Shown here: piece by piece, positions 8,882 to 59,528 of the stretch | Position numbering within the stretch: the first letter of the stretch is position 1 | Layout: each line of letters starts with the position of its first letter | Sequence record: OR538032.1 | DNA length: 64,000 nucleotides | Direction: 5' to 3' (one strand) | Position numbers and translations under genes: made by a program | Notes under the pieces: model-generated | Database searches by the model: none | What the model saw: only the letters and a program-made list of their open reading frames with translations | Told to the model about the DNA's origin: nothing

Positions 8882-8902
8882 AGCCCCGAAAGGGGCTTTT
8901 TT
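8882..8902 (+). terminator. intrinsic terminator
   Basis: AGCCCC-GAAA-GGGGCT-TTTT. Confidence 0.9.
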
Positions 8903-8907
8903 AGGTT

Positions 8908-8975
8908 TGAGCCGGAAAAATTCCGTCTCATCTTAGTAGAATTAGTGCTTTTAGTAATATTAGAAGTATTAGTAA
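8908..8975 (+). repeat. hairpin plus 5x TTAG at 9-bp period (copy 1)
   Basis: TGAGcCGGAA-AAA-TTCCGtCTCA; TTAG at 8933, 8942, 8951, 8960, 8969. Confidence 0.9.
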
Positions 8976-8980
8976 GATTT

Positions 8981-9010
8981 GTTTAACAAACACCTTGACA
9001 GCCGTATAAT
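8981..9010 (+). promoter_or_regulatory. class II promoter
   Basis: G-TTTAAC-N17-TATAAT. Confidence 0.65.
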
Positions 9011-9028: not shown

Positions 9029-9268
9029 ATGATAACGATATACACAATTCCTAACTGTGACGGTTGTCGTCACGCTATCGCCCTCTGTAAGTTCAAACAC
9101 GTCCCGTATACTGTAATCGAGTTACAGTCACAGACTGACATCGACCAATTACATCAAAAGCTTGGTGGCAATCGCAATATTCGCGTTCCTCTGGCTATGC
9201 ATGGTGACACATACATCGGTCACCTGCCTGAATTGAAGAAATGGGTTGATGAACAGACGTATAAATAA
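9029..9268 (+). CDS. glutaredoxin
   Basis: IYTIPNCDGC active site; VP motif; YIG. Confidence 0.9.
   Translation: MITIYTIPNCDGCRHAIALCKFKHVPYTVIELQSQTDIDQLHQKLGGNRNIRVPLAMHGDTYIGHLPELKKWVDEQTYK
9260..9267 (+). promoter_or_regulatory. T4-type late promoter
   Basis: Exact TATAAATA. Confidence 0.85.
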
Positions 9269-21458: not shown

Positions 21459-21492
21459 TAAATATGTTTTTATTATGCTGTTGAGATTAATC

Positions 21493-21873
21493 ATGGACAT
21501 TATTAACAAACTTGAAATTCAATTACCAGATGACGATGCCTTTCTAAAGATTCGCGAGACTCTAACGCGAATTGGCATCGCCAATAACAAAACAAACACT
21601 CTGTACCAGTCATGTCATATTCTTCAGAAGCGTGGCGTTTACTTTCTGGTACACTTCAAAGAGCTTTTAGCACTTGACGGTCGTTGTGTGGAAATCACTG
21701 CTGAAGACATTGAACGACGCAACAACATCGCCAAGTTACTCGAAGATTGGAACTTGTGTAAGATTGCTCATCCTGAGTCACATGAATTCACTGGTGACAA
21801 TAAGTTCCGCGTAATTTCGTTCCGCGATTCTAAAAACTGGAATCTAAGGTACAAATACAAAATCGGTGGCTAA
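21493..21873 (+). CDS. regA: translational repressor RegA
   Basis: FLKIRETLTRIGIAN, LYQSCHILQKRG, HFKELL. Confidence 0.97.
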   Translation: MDIINKLEIQLPDDDAFLKIRETLTRIGIANNKTNTLYQSCHILQKRGVYFLVHFKELLALDGRCVEITAEDIERRNNIAKLLEDWNLCKIAHPESHEFTGDNKFRVISFRDSKNWNLRYKYKIGG

Positions 21874-33050: not shown

Positions 33051-33674
33051 ATGCTTCTAGCTGACTACATCAAACACGCAATGCAAGAATATCACACGAT
33101 TTTCCCGACACGATTTTCTGTGCTTGAACACCTTTTCGCTACGAATGGGAATGGAATCACGCTCAAAAACGGTTATATTTATGATCGCGAGACCCGTGAC
33201 GTAAAGCAAAAGCCCTTGCTATCGCGTGAAGACATCATTCTAGAAGTGAAAGACGCTTCTGAGCATTCTCTAGGCATGTGGGCTCGGTTTGTCAAAGAAC
33301 TCGGTGATGAACACCCAGAGCTAGTCGAAAAATTCAAGAAGAAGATCGACGCACAGCTTGAAGAAGATGAACGCACGGTCGAAAGACTATGTAACATCGA
33401 CGAAGCATACAAAATTCATCCAGATTTAACCAATCTGCATGTATATGCATGGGGCGGGGATCGTCGATACATTCCAATGTATGACTTCGAAAACTCGAAG
33501 TACGATGACACAATCGAGCAACTTGAGTACTTCAGAGATTGCATTGCCAACGCAACTGTACGCGAAGTCACAGAAGACGACTCACAAACCGATCAGTTCT
33601 ACGCTCGTGGACTCGTATCGTGGAAAGAAAACATCGGTGAAATCGACAAAATCATAGAGAAGCTTCGTAAGTAA
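33051..33674 (+). CDS. hypothetical protein
   Basis: AGAGAG RBS before ATG 33051. Confidence 0.75.
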   Translation: MLLADYIKHAMQEYHTIFPTRFSVLEHLFATNGNGITLKNGYIYDRETRDVKQKPLLSREDIILEVKDASEHSLGMWARFVKELGDEHPELVEKFKKKIDAQLEEDERTVERLCNIDEAYKIHPDLTNLHVYAWGGDRRYIPMYDFENSKYDDTIEQLEYFRDCIANATVREVTEDDSQTDQFYARGLVSWKENIGEIDKIIEKLRK

Positions 33675-42664: not shown

Positions 42665-43591
42665 ATGAAAAGTACAATGTTTTTGAACAACATCACATGC
42701 ATCGACCATGCATGGGTTGATGATATGGGTGAAATGAATGGTAATAGCTACAATCTATGTGTAGAAATTACCGGTGAAGTTGACGAGACTGAACAAGTTG
42801 TTATTGATTTCAGTGGTTGTAAGAAAGCAATCAAACATCTTGTGGATGATTCTGAATTCGCCATTGATCATCGTCTAGTCGTCGTTGACGGGTTTAGTGA
42901 TGCAGTTCTTTCTCAAGTCGAAGATCGACTACGCATTCAAATCGACACGCCGGTCTTTCATGCAGTGTCCACGGTTGACGACTGGTATCAAGTCATCAAG
43001 CCGAGCGAATTGATTGAAGCCGACTTTAAAATCCCTAGCGATTCTCTGTACATGTCGTATGTTACTGAGTATCTTGAAGATATGCTGCTTGAACAGCTAC
43101 GCAAGCAAGGTTATCCCGTTACACACGTCGCTGTAGAGCTTTCAGAGTCGTTTGACTTACCATCATGGGCAAACAGTCACGTTGAATTCAATTACGCTCA
43201 CGGACTGCGTTCAAGCACATCATACGGATGTCAGAACATTGCACACGGTCATCGTTCATTCATTGCAGTAGATCAGCATTTGAACAGTAACGGTCGCAAG
43301 GTGCTGAAGCGCATTGCTAAAGAAATGAGCGGTTATATTGCTTGGTCAGAAAACATTCGCAAAGAAGATGAAGTGTCTTACACTTCAAAACGCGGCAACT
43401 TCTACTTGAGACACAGCAATATCAAAGTAATCCCGACGGAAACTACAGTCGAAAATCTAGCCAATTACATTGCAACTACATACGAAGAAGAGTTCCAACG
43501 AATGGGAGTTCAGCGTGTGTGGGTATCTGAGGGTCTATCAAAAGGCTCGGTTGTAGACATCAAAATCAACAAAGAATTGCTCTATAAGTAA
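42665..43591 (+). CDS. queD: 6-carboxytetrahydropterin synthase-like, tandem T-fold
   Basis: VIDFSGCKK, IDH, CQNIAHGH, TTVENLA; cluster context. Confidence 0.8.
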   Translation: MKSTMFLNNITCIDHAWVDDMGEMNGNSYNLCVEITGEVDETEQVVIDFSGCKKAIKHLVDDSEFAIDHRLVVVDGFSDAVLSQVEDRLRIQIDTPVFHAVSTVDDWYQVIKPSELIEADFKIPSDSLYMSYVTEYLEDMLLEQLRKQGYPVTHVAVELSESFDLPSWANSHVEFNYAHGLRSSTSYGCQNIAHGHRSFIAVDQHLNSNGRKVLKRIAKEMSGYIAWSENIRKEDEVSYTSKRGNFYLRHSNIKVIPTETTVENLANYIATTYEEEFQRMGVQRVWVSEGLSKGSVVDIKINKELLYK

Positions 43592-43604
43592 TCAACAAAT
43601 TAAT

Positions 43605-43634
43605 GTTTAGTAGCACGTCTCGGCGTGCTATTAT
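43605..43634 (+). promoter_or_regulatory. class II promoter with internal hairpin
   Basis: G-TTTAGT-N17-TATTAT; IR TAGCACG/CGTGCTA. Confidence 0.6.
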
Positions 43635-43659
43635 TGTTTTCTATCAATGAGGAAATAGA

Positions 43660-44328
43660 ATGTTAGACAAAAATAAAGTAGATCCAGTACTTGGACAAAA
43701 AGTTGAAGCGCATCTTCGTAAAATCGGGATGCACACGCCGACTGTTGAAAACGGTCTAACTGATGATGAAAAGAAAGCTATTCTTGAAGATCGTTTCACT
43801 GACATCATGCAAGCTCTTGGTCTTGACTTATCAGACGATTCATTAGTTGATACTCCGAAGCGTTGGGCTAAGATGATGGTGAATGAGCTTATGAGCGGTC
43901 TATCGCCAGATATGTTCCCGAAATGTACTGCTGTAGACAACAAGATGAACTACGATCAGATGGTTTGTGAAAAAGGAATTACTGTTCTTTCTCAGTGTGA
44001 GCATCACATCGTAACAATCGACGGCTTTGCCACTGTCGCATACATTCCGAAGAACAAAGTTCTTGGTCTGTCGAAAATGAATCGCATCGTTGAGTACTTC
44101 GCTCGTCGTCCGCAGATTCAAGAACGTCTGACTGTTCAAATCGCTGAAGCACTGAAGTTCATTCTTGAAACTGAAGACGTAGCGGTATTGATCGACGCCA
44201 AACACTATTGCGTGAAAGCACGCGGTGTTGAAGATAACAACTCAAGCACAGTGACTAGCCACTTATCTGGTGCTTTCCGTAACGAACCAGAGGCTCGCGC
44301 TGAGTTTATGTCACTTGCACGAGGGTAA
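43660..44328 (+). CDS. folE: GTP cyclohydrolase I
   Basis: DTPKRWAKM, SQCEHH, GLSKMNR, RPQIQERLT, HYCVKARG. Confidence 0.97.
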   Translation: MLDKNKVDPVLGQKVEAHLRKIGMHTPTVENGLTDDEKKAILEDRFTDIMQALGLDLSDDSLVDTPKRWAKMMVNELMSGLSPDMFPKCTAVDNKMNYDQMVCEKGITVLSQCEHHIVTIDGFATVAYIPKNKVLGLSKMNRIVEYFARRPQIQERLTVQIAEALKFILETEDVAVLIDAKHYCVKARGVEDNNSSTVTSHLSGAFRNEPEARAEFMSLARG

Positions 44329-44331
44329 TTG

Positions 44332-45708
44332 ATGATAATTGAATACGTTATGTCTGCGACGGGTCATGCTCGTCTCGGCGCAGCACATAAGCTAATGGAC
44401 GTGGTTGACACGTCCTATTTGCGCGACATTTTAAATGCAGCGCAAGATCTCGACGGCGTTCACAAAATCAGTATGCTGTACAATGCATATACTGAAAAGA
44501 AAGTCGGTCATCAAATCAATGACTTGTTCGGTGATTCTGTATACAAGGTACACGTCGATTCGGGTGGTCTACAGATAGTCAACTTGGGTTTAGAGAACAC
44601 GCCCGAACTTCGCAAAGCAGTATACGAGAATCAAGCAGAATCTGGTGATATTGGCATGTGTTTTGACGAAATCCCATTGCACAACGAAGCAAAGGGTGGT
44701 GGCGCTGCTCGTATCAACACGAAAGACAAGGTCTTCATGTATGATCTAGCGTACAAGTACGGCGTCAAAACAGGTAAGAACATTCGCGCACAAATCGAAA
44801 CTTATATCGAGAAGGGTAGCAAATGCAAACCGTATATCATCTTACAAGGCAACTCAGACGACGACTTTAAAGCATTCAGTGACGGGATTATGTCTCAACT
44901 CGAAGGCGTTGAAGATCACATTGCTGGTTGTGCTGCTGCCGATACATGCATTGGTAATGGCGTACGTGAGTCTATCGACATGATGAGCGTCATTCCGAAA
45001 CTCAACATCCCAGAGAAAGCAAAGAAATCAGTGCATATGCTGGGAGTTGGCTCAGTTAAACGTCTATTGCCTGCTGTAGCACTTATCAGAAGTGGTTATT
45101 TTGGTGATGACTTTCATATCAGCTATGACTCATCAACGCATACTGGATGTCTGACTAACCGAGAATACACAGACAAGCTTGGTCGCCGTCGTAAAATCTC
45201 AGGTCACGGAATTATGAAAGATGGTAAGAAATTGCCTTCTCGTGAGCTTGATGAAATGCTAGATGAAGTGTGGGGTCGATTCGGTCATACTCTACCGCGT
45301 AGCAAAGAAGAGTTCAAGGAATTCGCGACACGTCTGTGGTTGAAAGAACTCGACAAAGAAACAATGACTGACGAAGATATTGTGTTTGAAGTTGCTTGCA
45401 ACTTGTGTATAATCTTATCACAAGTCAACAACTTTCAAGCGATTATCTCTGAAACGTTTGACTTGAATACGCCAAAAGCTGCTGATTTGTCAGCGTTCTT
45501 CGGTGGTTCTATTGAGAAAAAAGAGCCGCAAGAGGGATTCAAGAAGTGGTCAGCGATTCGTCGTCTTGATGTTCTTGATAAACTACTTGACGTTAAAACT
45601 ATCGAAGCATATGATCGCTGGCACAGTAGCTATGTTGATAGACTACCGTCAATGCGCATTCGTCGCGGCACAACTGCTGAATTCCCAGCTTTCAAAGAAC
45701 AAGAATAG
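44332..45708 (+). CDS. TGT-fold guanine transglycosylase (DpdA-like)
   Basis: VDSGGLQ, MCFDEIP, ILQGN, VHMLGVG, YDSSTH; embedded in the que cluster. Confidence 0.75.
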   Translation: MIIEYVMSATGHARLGAAHKLMDVVDTSYLRDILNAAQDLDGVHKISMLYNAYTEKKVGHQINDLFGDSVYKVHVDSGGLQIVNLGLENTPELRKAVYENQAESGDIGMCFDEIPLHNEAKGGGAARINTKDKVFMYDLAYKYGVKTGKNIRAQIETYIEKGSKCKPYIILQGNSDDDFKAFSDGIMSQLEGVEDHIAGCAAADTCIGNGVRESIDMMSVIPKLNIPEKAKKSVHMLGVGSVKRLLPAVALIRSGYFGDDFHISYDSSTHTGCLTNREYTDKLGRRRKISGHGIMKDGKKLPSRELDEMLDEVWGRFGHTLPRSKEEFKEFATRLWLKELDKETMTDEDIVFEVACNLCIILSQVNNFQAIISETFDLNTPKAADLSAFFGGSIEKKEPQEGFKKWSAIRRLDVLDKLLDVKTIEAYDRWHSSYVDRLPSMRIRRGTTAEFPAFKEQE

Positions 45709-45726
45709 CGCCTTCGGGCGCTCTTT
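45708..45726 (+). terminator. weak UUCG terminator inside the que cluster
   Basis: GCGCC-TTCG-GGCGC-TCTTT. Confidence 0.55.
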
Positions 45727-45737
45727 ATGAGGTAAAC

Positions 45738-46646
45738 ATGAGCAATTATGATCAAGTTTCAGCTATTGCTGCTGAACATTTAGGTAAAAAAGCTGGCGAT
45801 TACAGCGATTTCGTTGACATCGTAGAAGTTCGCCCTGATTTACTCGTGCCAATCCCGCGTGAACTGAATCGAACTGACTACGGTATCACAAATGAAGACT
45901 TTGCAGGGTTTGATACGTGGCATGGCTTCGAAGTTTCTGCACTGACTGAACAAGGTCTGCCTGTATCAGGCATGGCTAAAGTAGTGTATCCGAGTGATTC
46001 ACCGAACATCGTTGAAAGTAAATCAATGAAACTGTACTGGAACAGCTTCAACATGGCTAAAGTCGCTGCGACTCGTGCTGAAGTGAAAGATGCAATTGAA
46101 GCAATCGCGTCGCGTGATCTATCTGAAGTCATCGGTGCGCCTGTTCAAGTAAGTTTCTTCACTGAAAAACTAACTCAACCGCATGGTATGACTGGCTTTG
46201 CTGAACTCGACAAATATGTTTCTGAATCGACTGTGTTTGACTCTGAGAGTGGTGCTGACGCTGATCTATTGCAAGAGTCGCACATCAAGAAACTGAAAGT
46301 GTTCACGCCTAATCTGCGTTCAAACTGTCGCGTTACACATCAACCCGACTTCGGTGATTTGTACGTATACATGAGCGGCGAAAAGACTCCGACTGTTGAT
46401 AGTCTGATGCAATACATCGTTTCTTTCCGCAAAGAGAATCATTTCCATGAAGAATGCGTTGAAATGATTTACAAAGCGTTGCTTGACAAGTTCGACCCGA
46501 CTGAACTGATGGTCACAGCGTTATACACACGTCGCGGTGGATGGAATATCTGTCCAGCACGAGCGACACACGAAGAGCTATTGCCAGAAGCACTTGGTAG
46601 TAAATCTGTCTCGCACACTAACGGAAGTTGTTTATTCCGTCAGTAA
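45738..46646 (+). CDS. queF: preQ0 nitrile reductase, class II (two-domain) QueF
   Basis: ESKSMKLYWNSF (QueF motif), RSNCRVTHQPDFG, FHEECVE, YTRRGG. Confidence 0.93.
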   Translation: MSNYDQVSAIAAEHLGKKAGDYSDFVDIVEVRPDLLVPIPRELNRTDYGITNEDFAGFDTWHGFEVSALTEQGLPVSGMAKVVYPSDSPNIVESKSMKLYWNSFNMAKVAATRAEVKDAIEAIASRDLSEVIGAPVQVSFFTEKLTQPHGMTGFAELDKYVSESTVFDSESGADADLLQESHIKKLKVFTPNLRSNCRVTHQPDFGDLYVYMSGEKTPTVDSLMQYIVSFRKENHFHEECVEMIYKALLDKFDPTELMVTALYTRRGGWNICPARATHEELLPEALGSKSVSHTNGSCLFRQ

Positions 46647-46701
46647 TAAGAGCTATGATGAGTGTTCAATTGTGAGCACTCATATACTTGAGAGGTTAAA
46701 A

Positions 46702-47418
46702 ATGAAAGTAGTATCTGTTCTAAGCGGTGGCTTGGACTCAACAATCCTTACGTACAAACTAGTTGACGAATTCGGCAAAGACAATGTGTTTGCATTATCG
46801 TTCTACTACGGTCAAAAACAGTCGATTGAGCTAGAAAAAGCTAAATTGACTTGTCAAAAGCTCGGCATCGAGCATCGTCTAATTGACATTTCATTCTTAG
46901 GTGAAGTCGTCGCGCCAGTCTGTGCGAATATCGCTGGTTCAGATGTTGCTATGCCAACTATTCAAGATGTTCTCGGTGACCCTCAGCCACCAACTGAAGT
47001 TCCATATCGTAACATGCTATTGAACACAATCGCGTTCTCATTCGCACAAGCAAATGGTTGTTCAGCGGTGTTTACGGGTATTCAAGTGCATGACGCATAT
47101 GGTTATTGGGACTGCACGCAAGATTTTCTTGACGGTATGAACAAAATTTCAGCACTGAATCGTCAACACGAAATCACATTACATGCGCCGTTCGCTCAAA
47201 TGTCAAAAGCTGATGAAATCGCTATCGGTGTTGAGCTTGGTGTGCCGTTCGAGGATAGTCTGACTTGTTACGACCCGAACGAAGCTGGCGAAAGCTGTGG
47301 TAAATGTCCGTCGTGTGCTGAACGCATCATGAACTTCGGCAAAGCTGGTATAGTCGATCCTGCGCCTTACTCAATTGACATCCCGTGGAAGCAAGTATTT
47401 GCTAAGGCAGGTCATTAA
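46702..47418 (+). CDS. queC: 7-cyano-7-deazaguanine synthase
   Basis: SGGLDS, YGQK..EL, VPYRN, YWDC, CY...CGKCPSC. Confidence 0.95.
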   Translation: MKVVSVLSGGLDSTILTYKLVDEFGKDNVFALSFYYGQKQSIELEKAKLTCQKLGIEHRLIDISFLGEVVAPVCANIAGSDVAMPTIQDVLGDPQPPTEVPYRNMLLNTIAFSFAQANGCSAVFTGIQVHDAYGYWDCTQDFLDGMNKISALNRQHEITLHAPFAQMSKADEIAIGVELGVPFEDSLTCYDPNEAGESCGKCPSCAERIMNFGKAGIVDPAPYSIDIPWKQVFAKAGH

Positions 47419-48026
47419 TGTGTGGATTATTTGCTGCTAGAAGCAAGCAAGAGCTTATTGAATTGTCAAAAAGCAACATTCATCGTGGTTCGCGTACTCA
47501 CTCTGTGAGTACGTTTAAGAACGGTCACGTGACGATTCATAAGTTTACAGGCGCGTTTGACGCGACGAATGTTCCCGATAGTGCAGATTTTTATATTTGT
47601 CACGTACAAGCACCGACGGGAACAAGTGCTCAAGCACATCCCGCTATTGTGACAATCGAAGAGAATGGCCAATTACACGATTCACACGTGTGGCACAATG
47701 GCATTCTTAAAGATCATTACATGAAAAAGCAGTCTCAAGATTGGGATACTGCACACATTGCCGAAGCAATTTGCTACGGAAAACTAAACGAACTTGACGG
47801 TACATTTGCTTGTTTTCACTTCATAAACGGTCATTTGCGTGTATTTCGCAATGAAATCAGCCCGCTGTTCATGAGTGAAGACGGGACATCGTTTAGCAGC
47901 ACGCGAACGATTCTCACGCCAGAGCATGTTGAGCCGAATAAAGTGTTTAACATCGACTTGAAGACGTTTAAAATGTCAATCGTAAACGAGTTCAAGACTC
48001 TAGAAAACCCCTATTTCTTTATGTGA
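47418..48026 (+). CDS. class II (Ntn) glutamine amidotransferase
   Basis: N-terminal MCGLF, RG, HP, HNG, LDGTFA, RN..PL. Confidence 0.8.
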   Translation: MCGLFAARSKQELIELSKSNIHRGSRTHSVSTFKNGHVTIHKFTGAFDATNVPDSADFYICHVQAPTGTSAQAHPAIVTIEENGQLHDSHVWHNGILKDHYMKKQSQDWDTAHIAEAICYGKLNELDGTFACFHFINGHLRVFRNEISPLFMSEDGTSFSSTRTILTPEHVEPNKVFNIDLKTFKMSIVNEFKTLENPYFFM

Positions 48027-50453: not shown

Positions 50454-51461
50454 ATGAGCTTTGTGAAATACACATCATTAGAAAACAGCTACCGTCAAGC
50501 ATTCGTAGACAAATGCGACATGCTTGGCGTTCGCGAGTGGGTAGCACTTGAGAAGATTCATGGTGCAAACTTCAGTTTCATCGTCGAGTTCAAGCCGAAT
50601 GAAGCACAAGACGGCGCAGAATTCACTGTAACGCCCGCTAAACGCACTTCTACTATCGGTGCTAACGTTATGGGCGATTACGACTTCTACGGCTGTACGA
50701 GCGTTGTAGAAGCTCACACAGCGAAGATGGAAGCAATCTCAAACTGGCTGTGGGCGCGTGGGATCATCAATGTAGGTGAAACAATCATCGTCTACGGTGA
50801 ACTTGCAGGCAAAGGCGTTCAGAAAGAAGTGAACTACGGTGATAAAGACTTCTGGGCTTACGACATCTTGCTGCCTGAAACAGGCAAGTTTCTAGATTGG
50901 GATGTCGTGCTCGAAGCGTGTGAGTTTGCAAAAGTCAAGACGACTCACGAAATTGCTCGTGGCACACTCGATGAACTACTTCGAATTGACCCCCTCTTCA
51001 GAAGCTTTCACACGCCCGCTGACGTTGACGGTGATAATGTAGCAGAAGGGTTCGTTGTTAAGCAATTACGCAATGAGAAACGCTTACACAACGGTTCTCG
51101 TGCAATTCTGAAGGTCAAGAACGATAAGTTCAAAGAGAAAAAGAACAAAGCAGGTAAAACTCCGCGTGCTGCTGTTGTTCTTACTGAAGAGCAAGAGAAA
51201 CTACACGCTGCGTTTAGCTGCTACTTAACGGAAAACCGTTTACGCAACGTGCTAAGTAAGCTTGAGACTGTGACACAAAAGCAGTTCGGGATGATCAGCG
51301 GTTTATTCATCAAAGACGCCAAAGATGAGTTTGAGCGTGACGAACTCAACGAAACGGCAATTGCTCGTGATGATTGGGACGTGATCAAGCGTTCACTGAC
51401 GAATATCGCCAATGAAATTTTACGCAAGAACTGGCTGGATATTCTAGACGGGAATTTCTAA
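50454..51461 (+). CDS. rnlB: RNA ligase 2
   Basis: EKIHGANFSF, YGEL.G, EGFVVK, LKVKNDKFKE. Confidence 0.95.
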   Translation: MSFVKYTSLENSYRQAFVDKCDMLGVREWVALEKIHGANFSFIVEFKPNEAQDGAEFTVTPAKRTSTIGANVMGDYDFYGCTSVVEAHTAKMEAISNWLWARGIINVGETIIVYGELAGKGVQKEVNYGDKDFWAYDILLPETGKFLDWDVVLEACEFAKVKTTHEIARGTLDELLRIDPLFRSFHTPADVDGDNVAEGFVVKQLRNEKRLHNGSRAILKVKNDKFKEKKNKAGKTPRAAVVLTEEQEKLHAAFSCYLTENRLRNVLSKLETVTQKQFGMISGLFIKDAKDEFERDELNETAIARDDWDVIKRSLTNIANEILRKNWLDILDGNF

Positions 51462-51463
51462 AC

Positions 51464-51658
51464 TTGAAAAAGCGTGCGTGGTTCTTTGTATTTTGCGGAA
51501 TCGGTGCTATAAGCTACTTCGGTGGCTTATTCTTAGCGTCGCTGCTTATCTCGAAGTCAATCGAAGCATCTATAATGTTCATCGGAATCGTGTTTCTAGC
51601 CCTCTTAAATACAATCAGAGCGGGCATCGAAGAAGATGAAAACAACAAAGCCCCTTAA
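51464..51658 (+). CDS. two-TM membrane protein
   Basis: Hydrophobic; TTG start. Confidence 0.55.
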   Translation: MKKRAWFFVFCGIGAISYFGGLFLASLLISKSIEASIMFIGIVFLALLNTIRAGIEEDENNKAP

Positions 51659-51671
51659 TTGGGGCTTTTTT
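51647..51671 (+). terminator. intrinsic terminator
   Basis: AAAGCCCC-TTAATT-GGGGCTTTTT. Confidence 0.8.
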
Positions 51672-51685
51672 ATGGGTGAAAGAAA

Positions 51686-52234
51686 ATGGCATTTATGAAA
51701 AAAGAGAAAGACGCAAAAGACATTACCGAAGCAGATATGCAGTACGCAATTGCAGTACAAAGCGTATGGATTCACAAACGCTACACAGCGATTATTCCAA
51801 ACTGTTACACCAAATGGGATAATGAAGCTGATCTGTTTGCTATTCGTCCAAGTGGTCTTTGTGATGAGATTGAAATCAAAGTATCCAAAGCTGATTTTCG
51901 AATTGATGAGCAAAAATCAGTAAAGGTCATCGACGAAAGTACACCAAATCTACGATGGCATCGTTACGAAGACGTTCCAAAACGCACAGCATTGCAAGAT
52001 GGTAAAATGTCGAACTACTTCTGGTATGCATTCCCTAAAGGGCTTGTAGACCACTCTGAAGTCCCAGAATGGGCTGGTATAATCGAAGTGGATGGATTTC
52101 TGAACGCCAGAGAAGTAAGAATGCCAAAACGTCTGCATGGTGGCAAGATGACAATCGAAGAGCAACTAAAACAAATCAAGAAACTTGGCTATCGCTTCTG
52201 GAATCTGGTTAAAAAGAACAAAAAGGAACAGTGA
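51686..52234 (+). CDS. PD-(D/E)XK-fold protein, MmcB-like
   Basis: EADLFAI...EIEIKVSKADF..D; NYFWYAFP. Confidence 0.6.
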   Translation: MAFMKKEKDAKDITEADMQYAIAVQSVWIHKRYTAIIPNCYTKWDNEADLFAIRPSGLCDEIEIKVSKADFRIDEQKSVKVIDESTPNLRWHRYEDVPKRTALQDGKMSNYFWYAFPKGLVDHSEVPEWAGIIEVDGFLNAREVRMPKRLHGGKMTIEEQLKQIKKLGYRFWNLVKKNKKEQ

Positions 52235-52306
52235 GGCGGAAAAATTCCGCATCATCTTAGTAGAATTAGTAGTTTTAGTGAAGTTAGGGATATTAGTAGT
52301 ATTAGG
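52232..52306 (+). repeat. hairpin plus 6x TTAG at 9-bp period (copy 2)
   Basis: TGAgGCGGAA-AAA-TTCCGCaTCA; TTAG at 52257, 52266, 52275, 52284, 52293, 52302. Confidence 0.9.
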
Positions 52307-52332
52307 AGACTGTCAATGACTTGAAAAAGTTG

Positions 52333-52361
52333 TTGACAGTCTCCTTTTTTGATCGTACTAT
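52333..52361 (+). promoter_or_regulatory. sigma70-type promoter in the 3' arm of a 12-bp inverted repeat
   Basis: TTGACA-N17-TACTAT; IR GGAGACTGTCAA/TTGACAGTCTCC followed by T6. Confidence 0.7.
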
Positions 52362-52386
52362 ACAGTCCTTGAAACAAATTATGTGA

Positions 52387-52923
52387 GTGAAGACTATGAA
52401 CTTGAGTGAACGTGAAGAAGAGCTAAAAGCATTAGCGATTGACCATGTGTGTGACGATGAAGTTGCTGTCACCGTTTCATGCGCTGGTATGAGTAATTAC
52501 TACACTGTTTGCCCGTCAGAGTTCAAAGACTTTTTGGACAACCATGAGGGAACATCTTATGTAGCATTTGAATGGCACAACATCCCAGATGATTTACAAG
52601 ATGAAGAACTAGACTTCGATGGTCTACTTGCTTGGTTTAATCTAGATGAACATGAGCGTGAAATCTGCGAAGCATTGTATGATAATAACGTTTGTATGTC
52701 ATACGAAGATGCAGCCGAGAAAGTCAGTGACTGTTGGGTATTTGAAGGCACACGCGAAGACTATGCAAGACATGTAACGTCTGAATTAATGGGTATTCGC
52801 TTAGAAGATATGCCTGTCATTGTAAGCAGCAACATCAACTGGGGTGATGTATTCATCGACCTTGACGCAGAGGGTAGTATCTACGAGATTGGTCGCGACA
52901 AATACTTAACAGTACACGGTTAA
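52387..52923 (+). CDS. ArdA-like antirestriction (DNA mimic) protein
   Basis: Very acidic; EDYARHV...MP..VSSNINW..VFIDL resembles the ArdA C-terminus. Confidence 0.6.
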   Translation: MKTMNLSEREEELKALAIDHVCDDEVAVTVSCAGMSNYYTVCPSEFKDFLDNHEGTSYVAFEWHNIPDDLQDEELDFDGLLAWFNLDEHEREICEALYDNNVCMSYEDAAEKVSDCWVFEGTREDYARHVTSELMGIRLEDMPVIVSSNINWGDVFIDLDAEGSIYEIGRDKYLTVHG

Positions 52924-52924
52924 A

Positions 52925-53503
52925 ATGAGTAGCACAAAAGGTAACGTTAACAAAGACGATTACTACGCTACGCCAGACTGGATTGTTGAAGAGTTTCTTG
53001 AAAATTTCGAGAGACGTATACACACAACTCATCATTTGAGTATGTCTGCTATGCATGTTCTTGACCCATCATGTGGTGGTTGTTCTGAACACAAAGCAGC
53101 ATATCCAGTAGCTTACAAGAAATTGTATCATGTCGATATTGACACAATGGATATTCGTGAAGACAGTCACGCGCAAATTATCGCGAACTATCTCGAAACT
53201 GATGTTCAGAAGAATCATTACGACATGATCATGACGAACCCGCCGTTCAGCTTATCAGTTGATTTTGCTGAGAAAGCATTGAGTGAAATCAAGAACGGTG
53301 GTTATGTCGTCATGCTACAGCGTCTGAACTGGCTAGGTAGTATCAAAAGAAAGCCTTTCTGGGACACAATGCCCCTGAGAGCAGTGATGGTTCACCATCG
53401 TCGACCGTCATTCCATGGTACAAAAGGCACAGACTCGATTGAGTACGCGCACTTTGTATTTCAAAAAGGTTACGCAGGTAAAGCAGAGATTATAGTAATA
53501 TGA
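52925..53503 (+). CDS. amino (N6-adenine/N4-cytosine) DNA methyltransferase
   Basis: DDYYATP, VLDPSCGG, MTNPPF. Confidence 0.88.
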   Translation: MSSTKGNVNKDDYYATPDWIVEEFLENFERRIHTTHHLSMSAMHVLDPSCGGCSEHKAAYPVAYKKLYHVDIDTMDIREDSHAQIIANYLETDVQKNHYDMIMTNPPFSLSVDFAEKALSEIKNGGYVVMLQRLNWLGSIKRKPFWDTMPLRAVMVHHRRPSFHGTKGTDSIEYAHFVFQKGYAGKAEIIVI

Positions 53504-53709
53504 TTACTTCAGTTGAAACTTATGAAGGTCTACTAGACACATTCGAAAAACCACAACCAATGAAAATTGTGACTGGTGAGATTCACTATTCATTATTTGG
53601 CATTCCGTTGCTTCGTCGCAAATGCGAACTATTGCTAGAGACTTACTTAGTTTCAACTGACTCTATGCTCGGTGATGTTTACATGTGGGACGTGGCAAAA
53701 CGTTTATGA
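53500..53709 (+). CDS. hypothetical protein
   Basis: Coupled ORF. Confidence 0.65.
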   Translation: MITSVETYEGLLDTFEKPQPMKIVTGEIHYSLFGIPLLRRKCELLLETYLVSTDSMLGDVYMWDVAKRL

Positions 53710-54083
53710 GAAAATTATTAAGGGAACTTATGTCCAATTTCAAAGCAAATCTAAAAAGTCGCAGTACAATTAAGATCAATGGTACTGAGTATCACGGTAC
53801 AAGTGTGACGATCAAAAACGGCAAAGTCGTCGTTGACGGTCGTTTGCAAGGTGACATTGATGATCGCGTGGTGAACGTGTACATTGATGGTGACTGTACG
53901 CTTGTTCAGAACGAGAACGGCAATATTGCATGTCGTAACGTACAAGGTGACGTGTCAACGACTAATGGCGATATTGAATGTGACGATGTTAACGGTTCAG
54001 TATCATCAACGAACGGCGACATTAAATGCTGTGATGTTGGCGGGAACGTAAGCACAACCAACGGGGATATTATCCGAAAATGA
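53706..54083 (+). CDS. beta-strand repeat protein (DUF4097-like)
   Basis: Repeats V.G.V(S)TTNGDI.C. Confidence 0.7.
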   Translation: MRKLLRELMSNFKANLKSRSTIKINGTEYHGTSVTIKNGKVVVDGRLQGDIDDRVVNVYIDGDCTLVQNENGNIACRNVQGDVSTTNGDIECDDVNGSVSSTNGDIKCCDVGGNVSTTNGDIIRK

Positions 54084-59034: not shown

Positions 59035-59528
59035 TTCGTAATATCTTATTTGCTGCTCTTGCAGCTATGACACTCGCAGCATGTGATAACAATTCTGCGA
59101 CATTAGACACAAATGCTTACTATGCTGAACAAGAACAGCTATTAGTTGAAGCACCGACGACTGAAATGTTTGATACACAGCCACCAGTTGTTCAACCTGT
59201 ACAACAACCTGTACAACAACCTGTGATTATTCAGCAAGACGACGGGTTTGATCTAGGTGACGCAGCGATTGGTTTTGTTGCTGCTGAATTGATAGATGAA
59301 GTTGGTGATGCTTTCGAATCTAAGCATAAGAAGACTTATGTCGCGCCAGTGAAACAGCCTGTAATTAAGAAAGTTACACCGTATCAAGCGCCTAAAAAGC
59401 CTGTAGTAGTTAAGCCAACTGTAGTCAAACCGAGCACAGTTGAGACGAAACCTGAGAAAAAAGAGGGTTTTTTCAAGAAAGCAGTCAAAAAGGTTAAAAA
59501 AGTTAAGCGTAGTAAACGCAGAAAATAA
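59031..59528 (+). CDS. lipoprotein with Q/P/V repeats and Lys-rich tail
   Basis: Lipobox LAAC; 12-bp tandem repeat CAACCTGTACAA at 59193-59225. Confidence 0.75.
   Translation: MIRNILFAALAAMTLAACDNNSATLDTNAYYAEQEQLLVEAPTTEMFDTQPPVVQPVQQPVQQPVIIQQDDGFDLGDAAIGFVAAELIDEVGDAFESKHKKTYVAPVKQPVIKKVTPYQAPKKPVVVKPTVVKPSTVETKPEKKEGFFKKAVKKVKKVKRSKRRK

What the first reader, a model, noticed from the sequence alone, without database searches (positions are those of the whole stretch)
52232..52361. Dispersed TTAG element, copy 2, gating an antirestriction operon
Seen: TGA-g-GCGGAA-AAA-TTCCGC-a-TCA (the first TGA is the upstream stop codon), then six TTAG at exact 9-bp spacing. The last repeat runs into a perfect 12-bp IR (GGAGACTGTCAA/TTGACAGTCTCC) plus T6 that holds a -35 box. 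A transcript entering from upstream would end just after the array, giving a defined 3' RNA module of hairpin, UAG array and terminator. All TAGs share one reading frame. Same orientation as copy 1, with unrelated flanking genes, so selection appears to act on the element itself.
Basis: partly seen in the sequence, partly recalled or inferred. Interest (0 to 1): 0.8.

Follow-up and report, generated by a model that had tools for sequence, protein, structure and literature searches.

The report
Six-copy hairpin plus phased TTAG repeat
This is one of six copies of a roughly 100-base non-coding element found only in KVP40-like Vibrio phages, a small conserved hairpin followed by TTAG boxes exactly nine bases apart, which is clearly under selection and appears undescribed, though what it does is still inferred.

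Summary
The window is Vibrio phage PG216, a KVP40-like, T4-type phage.

**What the element is**
- It has three parts: a hairpin, a fixed 6-nt linker, and 5-6 TTAG boxes in an unbroken 9-nt register.
- KVP40, VH7D and VS1 each carry six copies at the same six loci. F86 and D480 carry copies at five of those loci.
- It was found in no bacterial genome, and it matches no Rfam family.
- None of the 35 distinct copies has an indel in the array.
- The hairpin stem is kept through compensatory and G-U changes that work only on the gene-sense strand.
- The array is almost free of C and has no conserved fold.
- It is not coding.
- All six KVP40 copies point the same way as the neighbouring genes, at joints between transcription units.

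- The inverted repeat, T6 and -35 box downstream of copy 2 form an ordinary terminator/promoter cassette of the published PeSL type.
- This cassette is not part of the element, so the "hairpin-array-terminator RNA module" is special to this locus.
- The "antirestriction operon" label is unsupported.

**Best reading (about 0.35)**
The element acts as sense-strand RNA. The hairpin would be a nucleation structure and the unpaired UUAG tract a landing strip for a cooperative single-strand-binding protein. The closest known parallels are the T4 gene 32 and RegA operators.

**Rivals**
- A double-stranded DNA operator or iteron array.
- An origin-like single-stranded DNA signal.
- An RNA processing site.
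- A recombination cassette.

The parts
51686..52234 (+). Upstream ORF (182 aa, function unknown). Its TGA stop at 52232-52234 lies inside the 5' side of the element's hairpin.
   Evidence: phrog_2776; weak MmcB-like hit
52231..52255 (+). Element hairpin. The outer pairs are GTGA/TCAT around a 1x1 mismatch, the inner stem is GCGGAA/TTCCGC, and the loop is AAA.
   Evidence: -11.4 kcal/mol, z -4.4; 87-90% of cells paired, more than every one of 500 shuffles; two pairs change on both sides and G-U variants occur. RNAalifold predicts only this helix.
52251..52256 (+). Linker ATCATC between hairpin and array. Its last five bases are invariant in all 35 copies.
52257..52310 (+). Array of six 9-nt units, each beginning with TTAG. 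The tract lacks C up to 52309. The last unit, TTAGGAGAC, also forms the start of the terminator stem.
52304..52351 (+). Intrinsic-terminator-like hairpin (19 pairs, 4-nt loop) plus T-run. This is a PeSL-type stem-loop and not part of the repeated element. The stem co-varies between genomes.
52333..52361 (+). Sigma-70-like early promoter TTGACA-17-TACTAT. Its -35 box lies in the 3' arm of the terminator stem.
52396..52923 (+). First downstream gene. The ATG at 52396 is in frame with the GTG at 52387. Function is unknown and it is not recognisably an antirestriction protein.
52925..53503 (+). DNA methyltransferase gene, second in the downstream unit.
   Evidence: phrog_799
8882..8902 (+). Copy 1 context: an intrinsic terminator of the upstream SprT-like gene, placed before the element.
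8908..8981 (+). Copy 1 of the element. Hairpin 8908-8930, linker, five TTAG units from 8933, then one TTTG unit that runs into the -35 box.
   Evidence: -9.5 kcal/mol, z -3.2
8983..9010 (+). Copy 1 context: promoter TTAACA-16-TATAAT of the glutaredoxin (nrdH-like) gene 9029-9268.
21475..21873 (+). regA homologue (T4-type translational repressor that binds unstructured RNA). It is a candidate partner only; no link has been shown.
   Evidence: PF01818, E 1.9e-72

Best explanation
**What it is (well supported)**
- A non-coding cis element of about 100 nt, specific to one phage genus, with six copies per genome.
- It consists of a short hairpin, a fixed linker, and 5-6 TTAG boxes in a strict 9-nt register within a C-poor tract.
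- All six KVP40 copies point the same way as the neighbouring genes and sit at the joint between two transcription units.

**How it most likely works (inferred)**
- It acts on the gene-sense strand as RNA.
- The hairpin is a structured nucleation or end-protecting element.
- The unpaired UUAG tract is a landing strip that a single-strand-binding protein coats cooperatively in 9-nt steps. This would resemble gp32 on the T4 gene 32 leader, or RegA-type repressors on unstructured repeat-rich leaders.

**The outcome would depend on what lies next to the element**
- At locus 3 the last boxes carry the Shine-Dalgarno sequence and abut the start codon, so occupancy would set translation of the next gene.
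- At copy 2 the sixth box is the first half of the terminator stem. Occupancy would compete with terminator folding on transcripts coming from the upstream gene.
- At the other loci only transcripts that read through the upstream terminator would carry the element.

**Shown versus inferred**
- Shown: copy number, conserved spacing, hairpin covariation, the strand skew, that it is non-coding, and the genomic contexts.
- Inferred: that it acts as RNA, that a protein binds it, and the regulatory output.
For: **Distribution**
- KVP40 has six copies, all co-oriented with the local genes (with annotation).
- The same six loci are occupied in VH7D and VS1. F86 and D480 carry copies at five of those loci.
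- blastn finds 5-7 places per genome in 47 of the 51 matching phage records. The other four hold 1 or 4 places and are much shorter records.

**Hairpin**
- 87% of cells pair across 35 copies, more than every one of 500 shuffles and more than all slid controls.
- GG/CC is swapped to CC/GG at two pairs in four copies.
- G-U stands at one pair in 15 copies.
- In F86 locus 1 two further changes both give G-U pairs.
- F86 locus 4 has a re-paired outer stem.
- Mean RNA stability is -8.5 kcal/mol on the sense strand against -6.8 on the antisense strand. For the commonest variant it is -11.6 against -7.1.

**Array**
- There are no indels. TTAG is present in 26-27 of 27 copies at units 1-5.
- At the otherwise variable positions C appears 12 times and G 159 times. 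This one-strand skew is expected for a tract that must stay unpaired.
- RNAalifold leaves the array open.

**Evidence that it is in mRNA**
- At copy 2 and locus 3 the upstream ORF ends inside or against the element, so it is certainly transcribed there.
- At locus 3 in four phages, and seemingly in two metagenome contigs, the array runs into a start codon. At locus 3 there is no promoter or terminator.

**Precedents**
- PMC3014915 describes the T4 gene 32 operator as a pseudoknot followed by an unstructured A+U tract with short repeats reaching the ribosome-binding site.
- The same review reports that RegA binds unstructured repeat-rich RNA.
- A regA homologue lies in the window.
Against: - At four of the six loci an intrinsic terminator lies directly upstream of the element and a promoter directly downstream. 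That is the least transcribed spot of an intergenic region, and a classical position for promoter-upstream DNA sites.
- No binding protein is known, and no known single-strand binder has a 9-nt step.
- The covariation rests on few independent events, because copies exchange sequence by gene conversion.
- Three copies have a weakened stem: meta1, F86 locus 6 and D480 locus 6.
- No transcript data were found for these phages.
Confidence: 0.35

Rival explanations
1. Double-stranded DNA operator or iteron array. A phage or host DNA-binding protein oligomerises on the tandem 9-bp boxes next to a palindrome and controls the adjacent early promoter, or blocks read-through.
For: - Terminator-element-promoter order holds at four of the six loci. 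The sixth unit overlaps the -35 box at loci 1 and 6.
- The spacing is strictly conserved.
- From my own knowledge, tandem short boxes bound by small cooperative repressors upstream of promoters are known in plasmids.
Against: - Locus 3 has no promoter at all.
- The distance from the array to the -10 box varies from about 72 to 99 bp without helical phasing (read).
- The palindrome changes symmetrically, and through G-U-type changes. That fits base pairing rather than one protein reading one sequence.
- Depletion of C but not G at variable positions is a one-strand property.
Confidence: 0.2
2. RNA punctuation. The hairpin protects an RNA end, and the A/U-rich unpaired boxes are endonuclease cleavage sites that separate upstream from downstream messages on read-through transcripts.
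For: - The strand-specific features are the same as for the best explanation.
- The element sits between cistrons or transcription units.
- T4 mRNAs are processed at intergenic sites near structured leaders (PMC3014915).
Against: - Cleavage sites do not need an exact 9-nt register or an invariant TTAG.
- Upstream terminators already supply 3' hairpins at four loci.
Confidence: 0.15
3. Origin-like or other single-stranded DNA signal. The sense DNA strand, displaced in an R-loop or exposed at a fork, folds the hairpin and offers the phased boxes to a replication or recombination protein. The six copies would be the multiple origins of this phage.
For: - The six copies are spread round the genome at intervals of 26-54 kb.
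- One copy lies directly upstream of the uvsY promoter region.
- T4 uses at least five origins. [quoted passage not shown]
Against: - The adjacent promoters fire away from the array, not through it.
- Locus 3 serves as a ribosome-binding region.
- G-T pairs are weak in DNA.
- No replication data exist for these phages.
Confidence: 0.1
4. Recombination cassette with no other role. The element is a repeat that persists and spreads because it mediates exchange of neighbouring genes, as proposed for PeSLs.
For: - Gene conversion occurs between loci: VH7D loci 2 and 4 are 98.6% identical, and variant blocks are shuffled among loci.
- The flank upstream of copy 2 is replaced in VS1, with 0.23 identity.
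- 1.081.O carries a tandem duplication.
- PeSL model: PMC2839356, PMC4122927.
Against: - Orthologous copies are more alike than paralogous ones (91.6% against 85.8%), so each locus is kept separately.
- Homology-driven exchange does not explain an invariant TTAG register, stem covariation, or a fixed orientation.
Confidence: 0.1
5. Small membrane peptide gene. The TTA-Gxx-xxx frame reads Leu-x-x repeats, and some annotators call it as an ORF.
For: Gene callers annotate sense-strand ORFs of about 30-57 aa across the element in K566 and D480.
Against: - Most copies have no start codon, and an in-frame stop lies directly upstream at loci 3, 5 and 6.
- The third base of every TTA is nearly invariant, although TTA makes up only 10.6% of Leu codons in this phage.
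- The changes seen in that frame are radical (Val/Glu/Gly). Third-codon positions are not the most variable.
Confidence: 0.02

Closest known systems
PeSL (promoter-early stem-loop) cassettes of T4-type phages, described for nt-1/KVP40 (PMC4122927, PMC2839356)
   Same: Both are conserved intergenic modules found next to sigma-70-like early promoters and at joints where gene content differs between relatives. The inverted repeat, T6 and TTGACA at 52304-52361 fit the PeSL description.
   Different: The PeSL description is a stem-loop, a promoter, a Shine-Dalgarno sequence and a start codon. It includes no second hairpin and no phased TTAG array. The TTAG module has only six copies, is better conserved, lies between the stem-loop and the promoter at four loci, and occurs without any promoter at locus 3.
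T4 gene 32 translational operator (PMC3014915)
   Same: A 5' structured element is followed by an unstructured, strand-skewed, repeat-bearing tract that reaches the ribosome-binding site. The T4 tract is coated cooperatively by a single-strand-binding protein.
   Different: Here the structure is a simple hairpin, not a pseudoknot. The repeat has an exact 9-nt register. There are six dispersed copies rather than one autoregulatory site. Only one locus abuts a start codon. No binding has been shown.
RegA operators of T4/RB69 (PMC3014915)
   Same: Both are unstructured, A/U-rich RNA with short repeated triplets near the stop codon of one gene and the start of the next. A regA homologue is encoded in the window.
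   Different: RegA sites are short, overlap or directly precede the AUG, and have no hairpin and no fixed register.
Ring-protein attenuator sites of Bacillus (TRAP, HutP); from my own knowledge, motifs not written out
   Same: Regularly spaced short repeats ending in AG lie on an unpaired RNA next to a terminator, and are read by an oligomeric protein. Six boxes would suit a hexamer.
   Different: The spacing there is shorter. The hosts are Gram-positive. I looked for no homologue of either protein in these phages. Only copy 2 in one clade has a terminator after the array.
T4 oriE iteron cluster (PMC3016281)
   Same: Evenly spaced short direct repeats lie near an early promoter in a T4-type genome that uses several origins.
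   Different: The T4 repeats are 12 nt long and occur at one locus, with no function established. Here the unit is 9 nt, there are six loci, and a sense-strand hairpin and strand skew are present.

Membership tests
PeSL (promoter-early stem-loop) | Stem-loop directly upstream of, or overlapping, a sigma-70-like early promoter | tested here: met
   Met for 52304-52361 only: 19-pair stem, T-run, and TTGACA-17-TACTAT with the -35 box in the 3' arm. The TTAG module itself is outside this definition.
PeSL (promoter-early stem-loop) | Shine-Dalgarno sequence and start codon of the downstream gene at the 3' end of the cassette | tested here: met
   ATG at 52396, 35 nt after the -10 box
PeSL (promoter-early stem-loop) | The TTAG array and its hairpin are part of the published motif | tested here: not met
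   The text and figure legends of PMC4122927 describe only an AT-rich region, a stem-loop, the -35/-10 boxes, a Shine-Dalgarno sequence and a start codon. The figures themselves could not be read.
Gene 32-type RNA operator | 5' structured nucleation element (a pseudoknot in T4) | tested here: inconclusive
   A conserved hairpin with covariation is present. No pseudoknot was predicted or tested.
Gene 32-type RNA operator | Unstructured repeat-bearing tract 3' of the structure | tested here: met
   There is no consensus pairing in the array and no covariation for its possible self-pairing. The tract is C-poor.
Gene 32-type RNA operator | The tract overlaps the ribosome-binding site of the regulated gene | tested here: not met
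   Not met at the two window copies, where a promoter lies between the array and the gene. Met at locus 3 of KVP40, VH7D, VS1 and K566.
Gene 32-type RNA operator | Cooperative binding by the cognate protein | not testable with these tools
   No binding data are available.
Iteron-type replication origin | Evenly spaced direct repeats | tested here: met
   Exact 9-bp register in 35 copies
Iteron-type replication origin | Initiator protein and replication start at the site | not testable with these tools
   No replication or binding data are available.
Protein-coding small ORF | Start codon, and a codon-like substitution pattern | tested here: not met
Any Rfam family | Covariance-model match | tested here: not met
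   Best hit scores 19.9 bits against a gathering score of 42.8; all hits are chance-level.
   No Pfam hit, PHROG of unknown function, no PDB relative

The most novel reading that the evidence does not exclude
The six copies are the operators of a phage-wide post-transcriptional regulon. An oligomeric RNA-binding protein, ring-shaped or filament-forming, would nucleate at the hairpin and read six UUAG boxes at a 9-nt step. That would be a Gram-negative phage counterpart of the repeat-reading attenuator proteins known from Bacillus. It would couple translation or read-through of nucleotide-metabolism and recombination genes (nrdH, gene 1, uvsY) to one sensor.
Probability: 0.12. Interest if true: 0.8.

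Novelty: new variant of a known kind. Interest (0 to 1): 0.6.

Why it matters
KVP40-type phages are a long-studied branch of the T4 family, and their regulation after the early phase is unclear. They encode AsiA but no recognisable MotA (PMC2988021).

This element is about 100 nt long, has six copies per genome, carries a co-varying hairpin and an exact 9-nt register, and is not in Rfam. I found no description of it. It is therefore a concrete handle on a regulatory or replication function that is shared across the genus and has not yet been named.

It also explains small "hypothetical protein" ORFs that annotation pipelines call across it, which are likely spurious. And it marks sites where neighbouring genes are exchanged between relatives.

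Tried and rejected
1. **Coding.** Rejected for all three sense frames and the antisense ATG frame. Start codons are missing, in-frame stops occur, TTA is invariant although it is a rare Leu codon, and only eight antisense codons are shared before the flanks diverge.
2. **Rfam.** Nothing above chance.
3. **Scan of viral contigs for five TTAG boxes at 9 bp.** Too unspecific.
4. **Host origin.** No match in representatives of 185,579 species.
5. **Helical phasing between array and promoter.** -10 offsets of about 72-99 bp show no period (read).
6. **Array folding on itself through UUAG/UUAG wobble pairing.** 91.6% of cells can pair, but this equals the shuffles, shows no covariation, and the folds differ between copies.
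7. **The upstream AGCGAAGCG box as a special mini-hairpin.** Its 7-nt core occurs 60 times in the KVP40 genome, and the box is absent from loci 1 and 2.
8. **The element as its own promoter,** with the TAG[A/T]AT of unit 1 as a -10 box. There is no -35 box, and a transcription start there would leave the co-varying hairpin untranscribed.
9. **The palindrome used elsewhere.** It occurs only in the six copies.
10. **Link to the 7-deazaguanine DNA modification of this genus.** The low level in nt-1 is of the same order as the G count of six elements, but a relative has 15% of its G modified. I treat this as numerology.
11. **Literature.** Two searches for transcript data or for the motif gave nothing usable. 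The KVP40 genome paper is not held.

Full report
**Identity of the window.** The region 51000-54000 is 100% identical to Vibrio phage PG216 and 98.7% identical to KVP40, a T4-type phage of the genus Schizotequatrovirus. The window corresponds to PG216 180028-244027.

**The observation.**
- The TGA at 52232-52234 ends ORF 51686-52234.
- GCGGAA-AAA-TTCCGC is flanked by TGA...TCA.
- Six TTAG boxes start at 52257, 52266, 52275, 52284, 52293 and 52302.
- The 12-bp inverted repeat extends to 19 pairs with a 4-nt loop and a T-run.
- TTGACA-17-TACTAT has its -35 box in the 3' arm of that stem.
- Runs of four phased TTAG boxes occur only in the two copies, and in none of 100 shuffles.
- The 53-nt C-free run is unique in the window.

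**Copy number and distribution.**
- A profile built from four copies, used only to locate further copies, finds six in KVP40. They lie upstream of nrdH, upstream of the ORF that follows KVP40.0135, against the start codon of KVP40.0252, between genes 3 and 1, between gene 12 and wac, and between gene 35 and uvsY.
- All six point the same way as the local genes, including the two on the minus strand.
- They are spaced 26-54 kb apart around the genome.
- VH7D and VS1 have copies at the same six loci. F86 and D480 have copies at five of those loci.
- blastn reports 5-7 places per genome in 47 of the 51 matching phage records, all from Vibrio phages. The other four hold 1 or 4 places and are much shorter records.
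- An exact-pattern scan found only KVP40 and VH7D in IMG/VR, three metagenome contigs, and nothing in representatives of 185,579 bacterial and archaeal species.
- There is no Rfam match.

**Anatomy across 35 distinct copies.**
- The 95-column alignment needs no gaps.
- TTAG is present in 26-27 of 27 copies at units 1-5 and in 21 of 27 at unit 6. The eight copies added later from F86 and D480 have all six.
- Within a unit, positions 1-4 are invariant, positions 5-7 vary most, and positions 8-9 are partly conserved.
- The last five linker bases and the whole of unit 1, apart from one A/T position, are invariant.
- Units keep their own identity between loci. The whole module was therefore duplicated as a unit; the arrays did not arise separately.
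- A further box, AGCGAAGCG, lies 10-20 nt upstream at loci 3-6 only.

**Selection versus homogenisation.**
- Orthologous copies are 91.6% identical and paralogous copies 85.8%.
- The 73-nt core is 92% identical between KVP40, VH7D and VS1, against 76% and 83% for the flanks.
- Gene conversion does occur. VH7D loci 2 and 4 are 98.6% identical, and three variant blocks are distributed without regard to orthology.
- In VS1 the flank upstream of copy 2 is unrelated, so the element sits at a gene-replacement joint.

**The hairpin.**
- The 9-pair model pairs 87% of cells, more than every one of 500 shuffles and far more than any slid control.
- Two adjacent pairs are swapped from G-C to C-G in four copies.
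- One pair is G-U in 15 copies and G-C in 16.
- F86 locus 1 carries two more changes, both giving G-U pairs.
- F86 locus 4 has changed the inner A-T pairs on both sides and gained an inner hairpin.
- These changes keep the helix only on the gene-sense strand. Mean RNA energy is -8.5 kcal/mol sense against -6.8 antisense, and -11.6 against -7.1 for the commonest variant.
- Three copies have a weakened stem.
- The events are few, and conversion spreads them between loci. The support is real but not overwhelming.

**The array.**
- RNAalifold predicts only the hairpin and leaves the array open.
- UUAG can wobble-pair with itself, which gives 91.6% pairable cells for a long A-U/G-U hairpin. This equals the shuffles, shows no covariation, and the minimum-energy folds differ from copy to copy.
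- At the variable positions C appears 12 times and G 159 times. This skew belongs to one strand.

**Not coding.**
- The TTA-frame reads Leu-x-x repeats, and gene callers annotate it in K566 and D480.
- Most copies lack a start codon, and loci 3, 5 and 6 have an in-frame stop directly upstream.
- TTA makes up 10.6% of Leu codons in 34 long ORFs, yet its third base is nearly invariant.
- The replacements seen in that frame are radical.

**Context.**
- At loci 1, 4, 5 and 6 the order is intrinsic terminator, element, sigma-70-like promoter, gene. At locus 6 the terminator is visible in the sequence but was not flagged by the scan.
- At locus 3 there is neither promoter nor terminator, and the last boxes provide the Shine-Dalgarno sequence and abut the start codon. 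The same holds in VH7D, VS1 and K566, and seemingly in two metagenome contigs.
- At copy 2 the upstream ORF's stop codon lies in the hairpin. The sixth box is the first half of a terminator whose stem co-varies between genomes.
- D480 and F86 show no terminator after the array at that locus.

**What is already known.**
- The inverted repeat, T6 and -35 box fit the published PeSL cassettes of nt-1/KVP40 (PMC4122927, PMC2839356). The text of those papers does not mention the TTAG module.
- The downstream genes are an ORF of unknown function and a DNA methyltransferase. They are not a recognisable antirestriction operon.

**Mechanism.**
- Several features point to the sense strand acting in single-stranded form: the sense-strand hairpin, the one-strand skew, the fixed orientation, and the loci where the element is certainly within an mRNA.
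- The closest precedents in T4-type phages are two. One is the gene 32 operator, a structured element followed by an unstructured repeat-bearing tract that reaches the ribosome-binding site and is coated cooperatively. The other is RegA binding to unstructured repeats (PMC3014915).
- A regA homologue is encoded in the window.
- I therefore favour an RNA landing-strip model at about 0.35.
- The main argument against it is the position of four loci between a terminator and a promoter. That position keeps a double-stranded DNA operator reading alive at 0.2.
- An RNA-processing role (0.15), an origin-like single-stranded DNA signal (0.1; T4 oriE has evenly spaced repeats, PMC3016281), a pure recombination cassette (0.1) and a small ORF (0.02) follow.

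Noticed in passing
L002:2195-2255 (KVP40 gene 32 leader; outside the window): The leader of gene 32 is a G-free tract with a repeated 6-nt motif running to the start codon. This is a second strand-skewed, repeat-bearing leader in this phage group, and may be the local counterpart of the T4 gene 32 operator.
   Followed up: no
L142:295-384; L154:5369-5530; L155:5353-5454; L156:9515-9634; L157:5466-5639: The annotations of K566 and D480 call small sense-strand "hypothetical protein" ORFs across the element. They correspond to the TTA-frame reading, or appear to, and are probably spurious.
   Followed up: partly
L141:126-384 (Vibrio phage 1.081.O, upstream of gene 1): Two tandem copies of the element lie 164 nt apart, the first carrying seven TTAG boxes.
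   Followed up: partly
window 52396-52923 / NC_005083.2 79213-79904: The KVP40 RefSeq record lists no CDS here, and locus tag 0136 is missing, while the window has an intact 175-178-aa ORF of PHROG 15771.
   Followed up: no
window about 42700-48000 (by synteny with KVP40.0120-0125): A 7-deazaguanine (preQ0/archaeosine-type) DNA-modification gene cluster. The relative nt-1 carries about 0.17% modified G, and another genus member 15% (PMC6884629, PMC12028318).
   Followed up: partly
window 59193-59224 and 33338-33383: A perfect 12-nt tandem repeat (2.7 copies) and a 22-nt tandem repeat (2.1 copies) reported by Tandem Repeats Finder.
   Followed up: no
L150:24357-24500 (VS1, copy 2 locus) against window 52150-52230: The sequence directly upstream of copy 2 is unrelated in VS1. 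The megablast match of VS1, VS2 and QD01 to the window is split into two pieces there, so a gene replacement appears to end at the element's 5' edge.
   Followed up: partly
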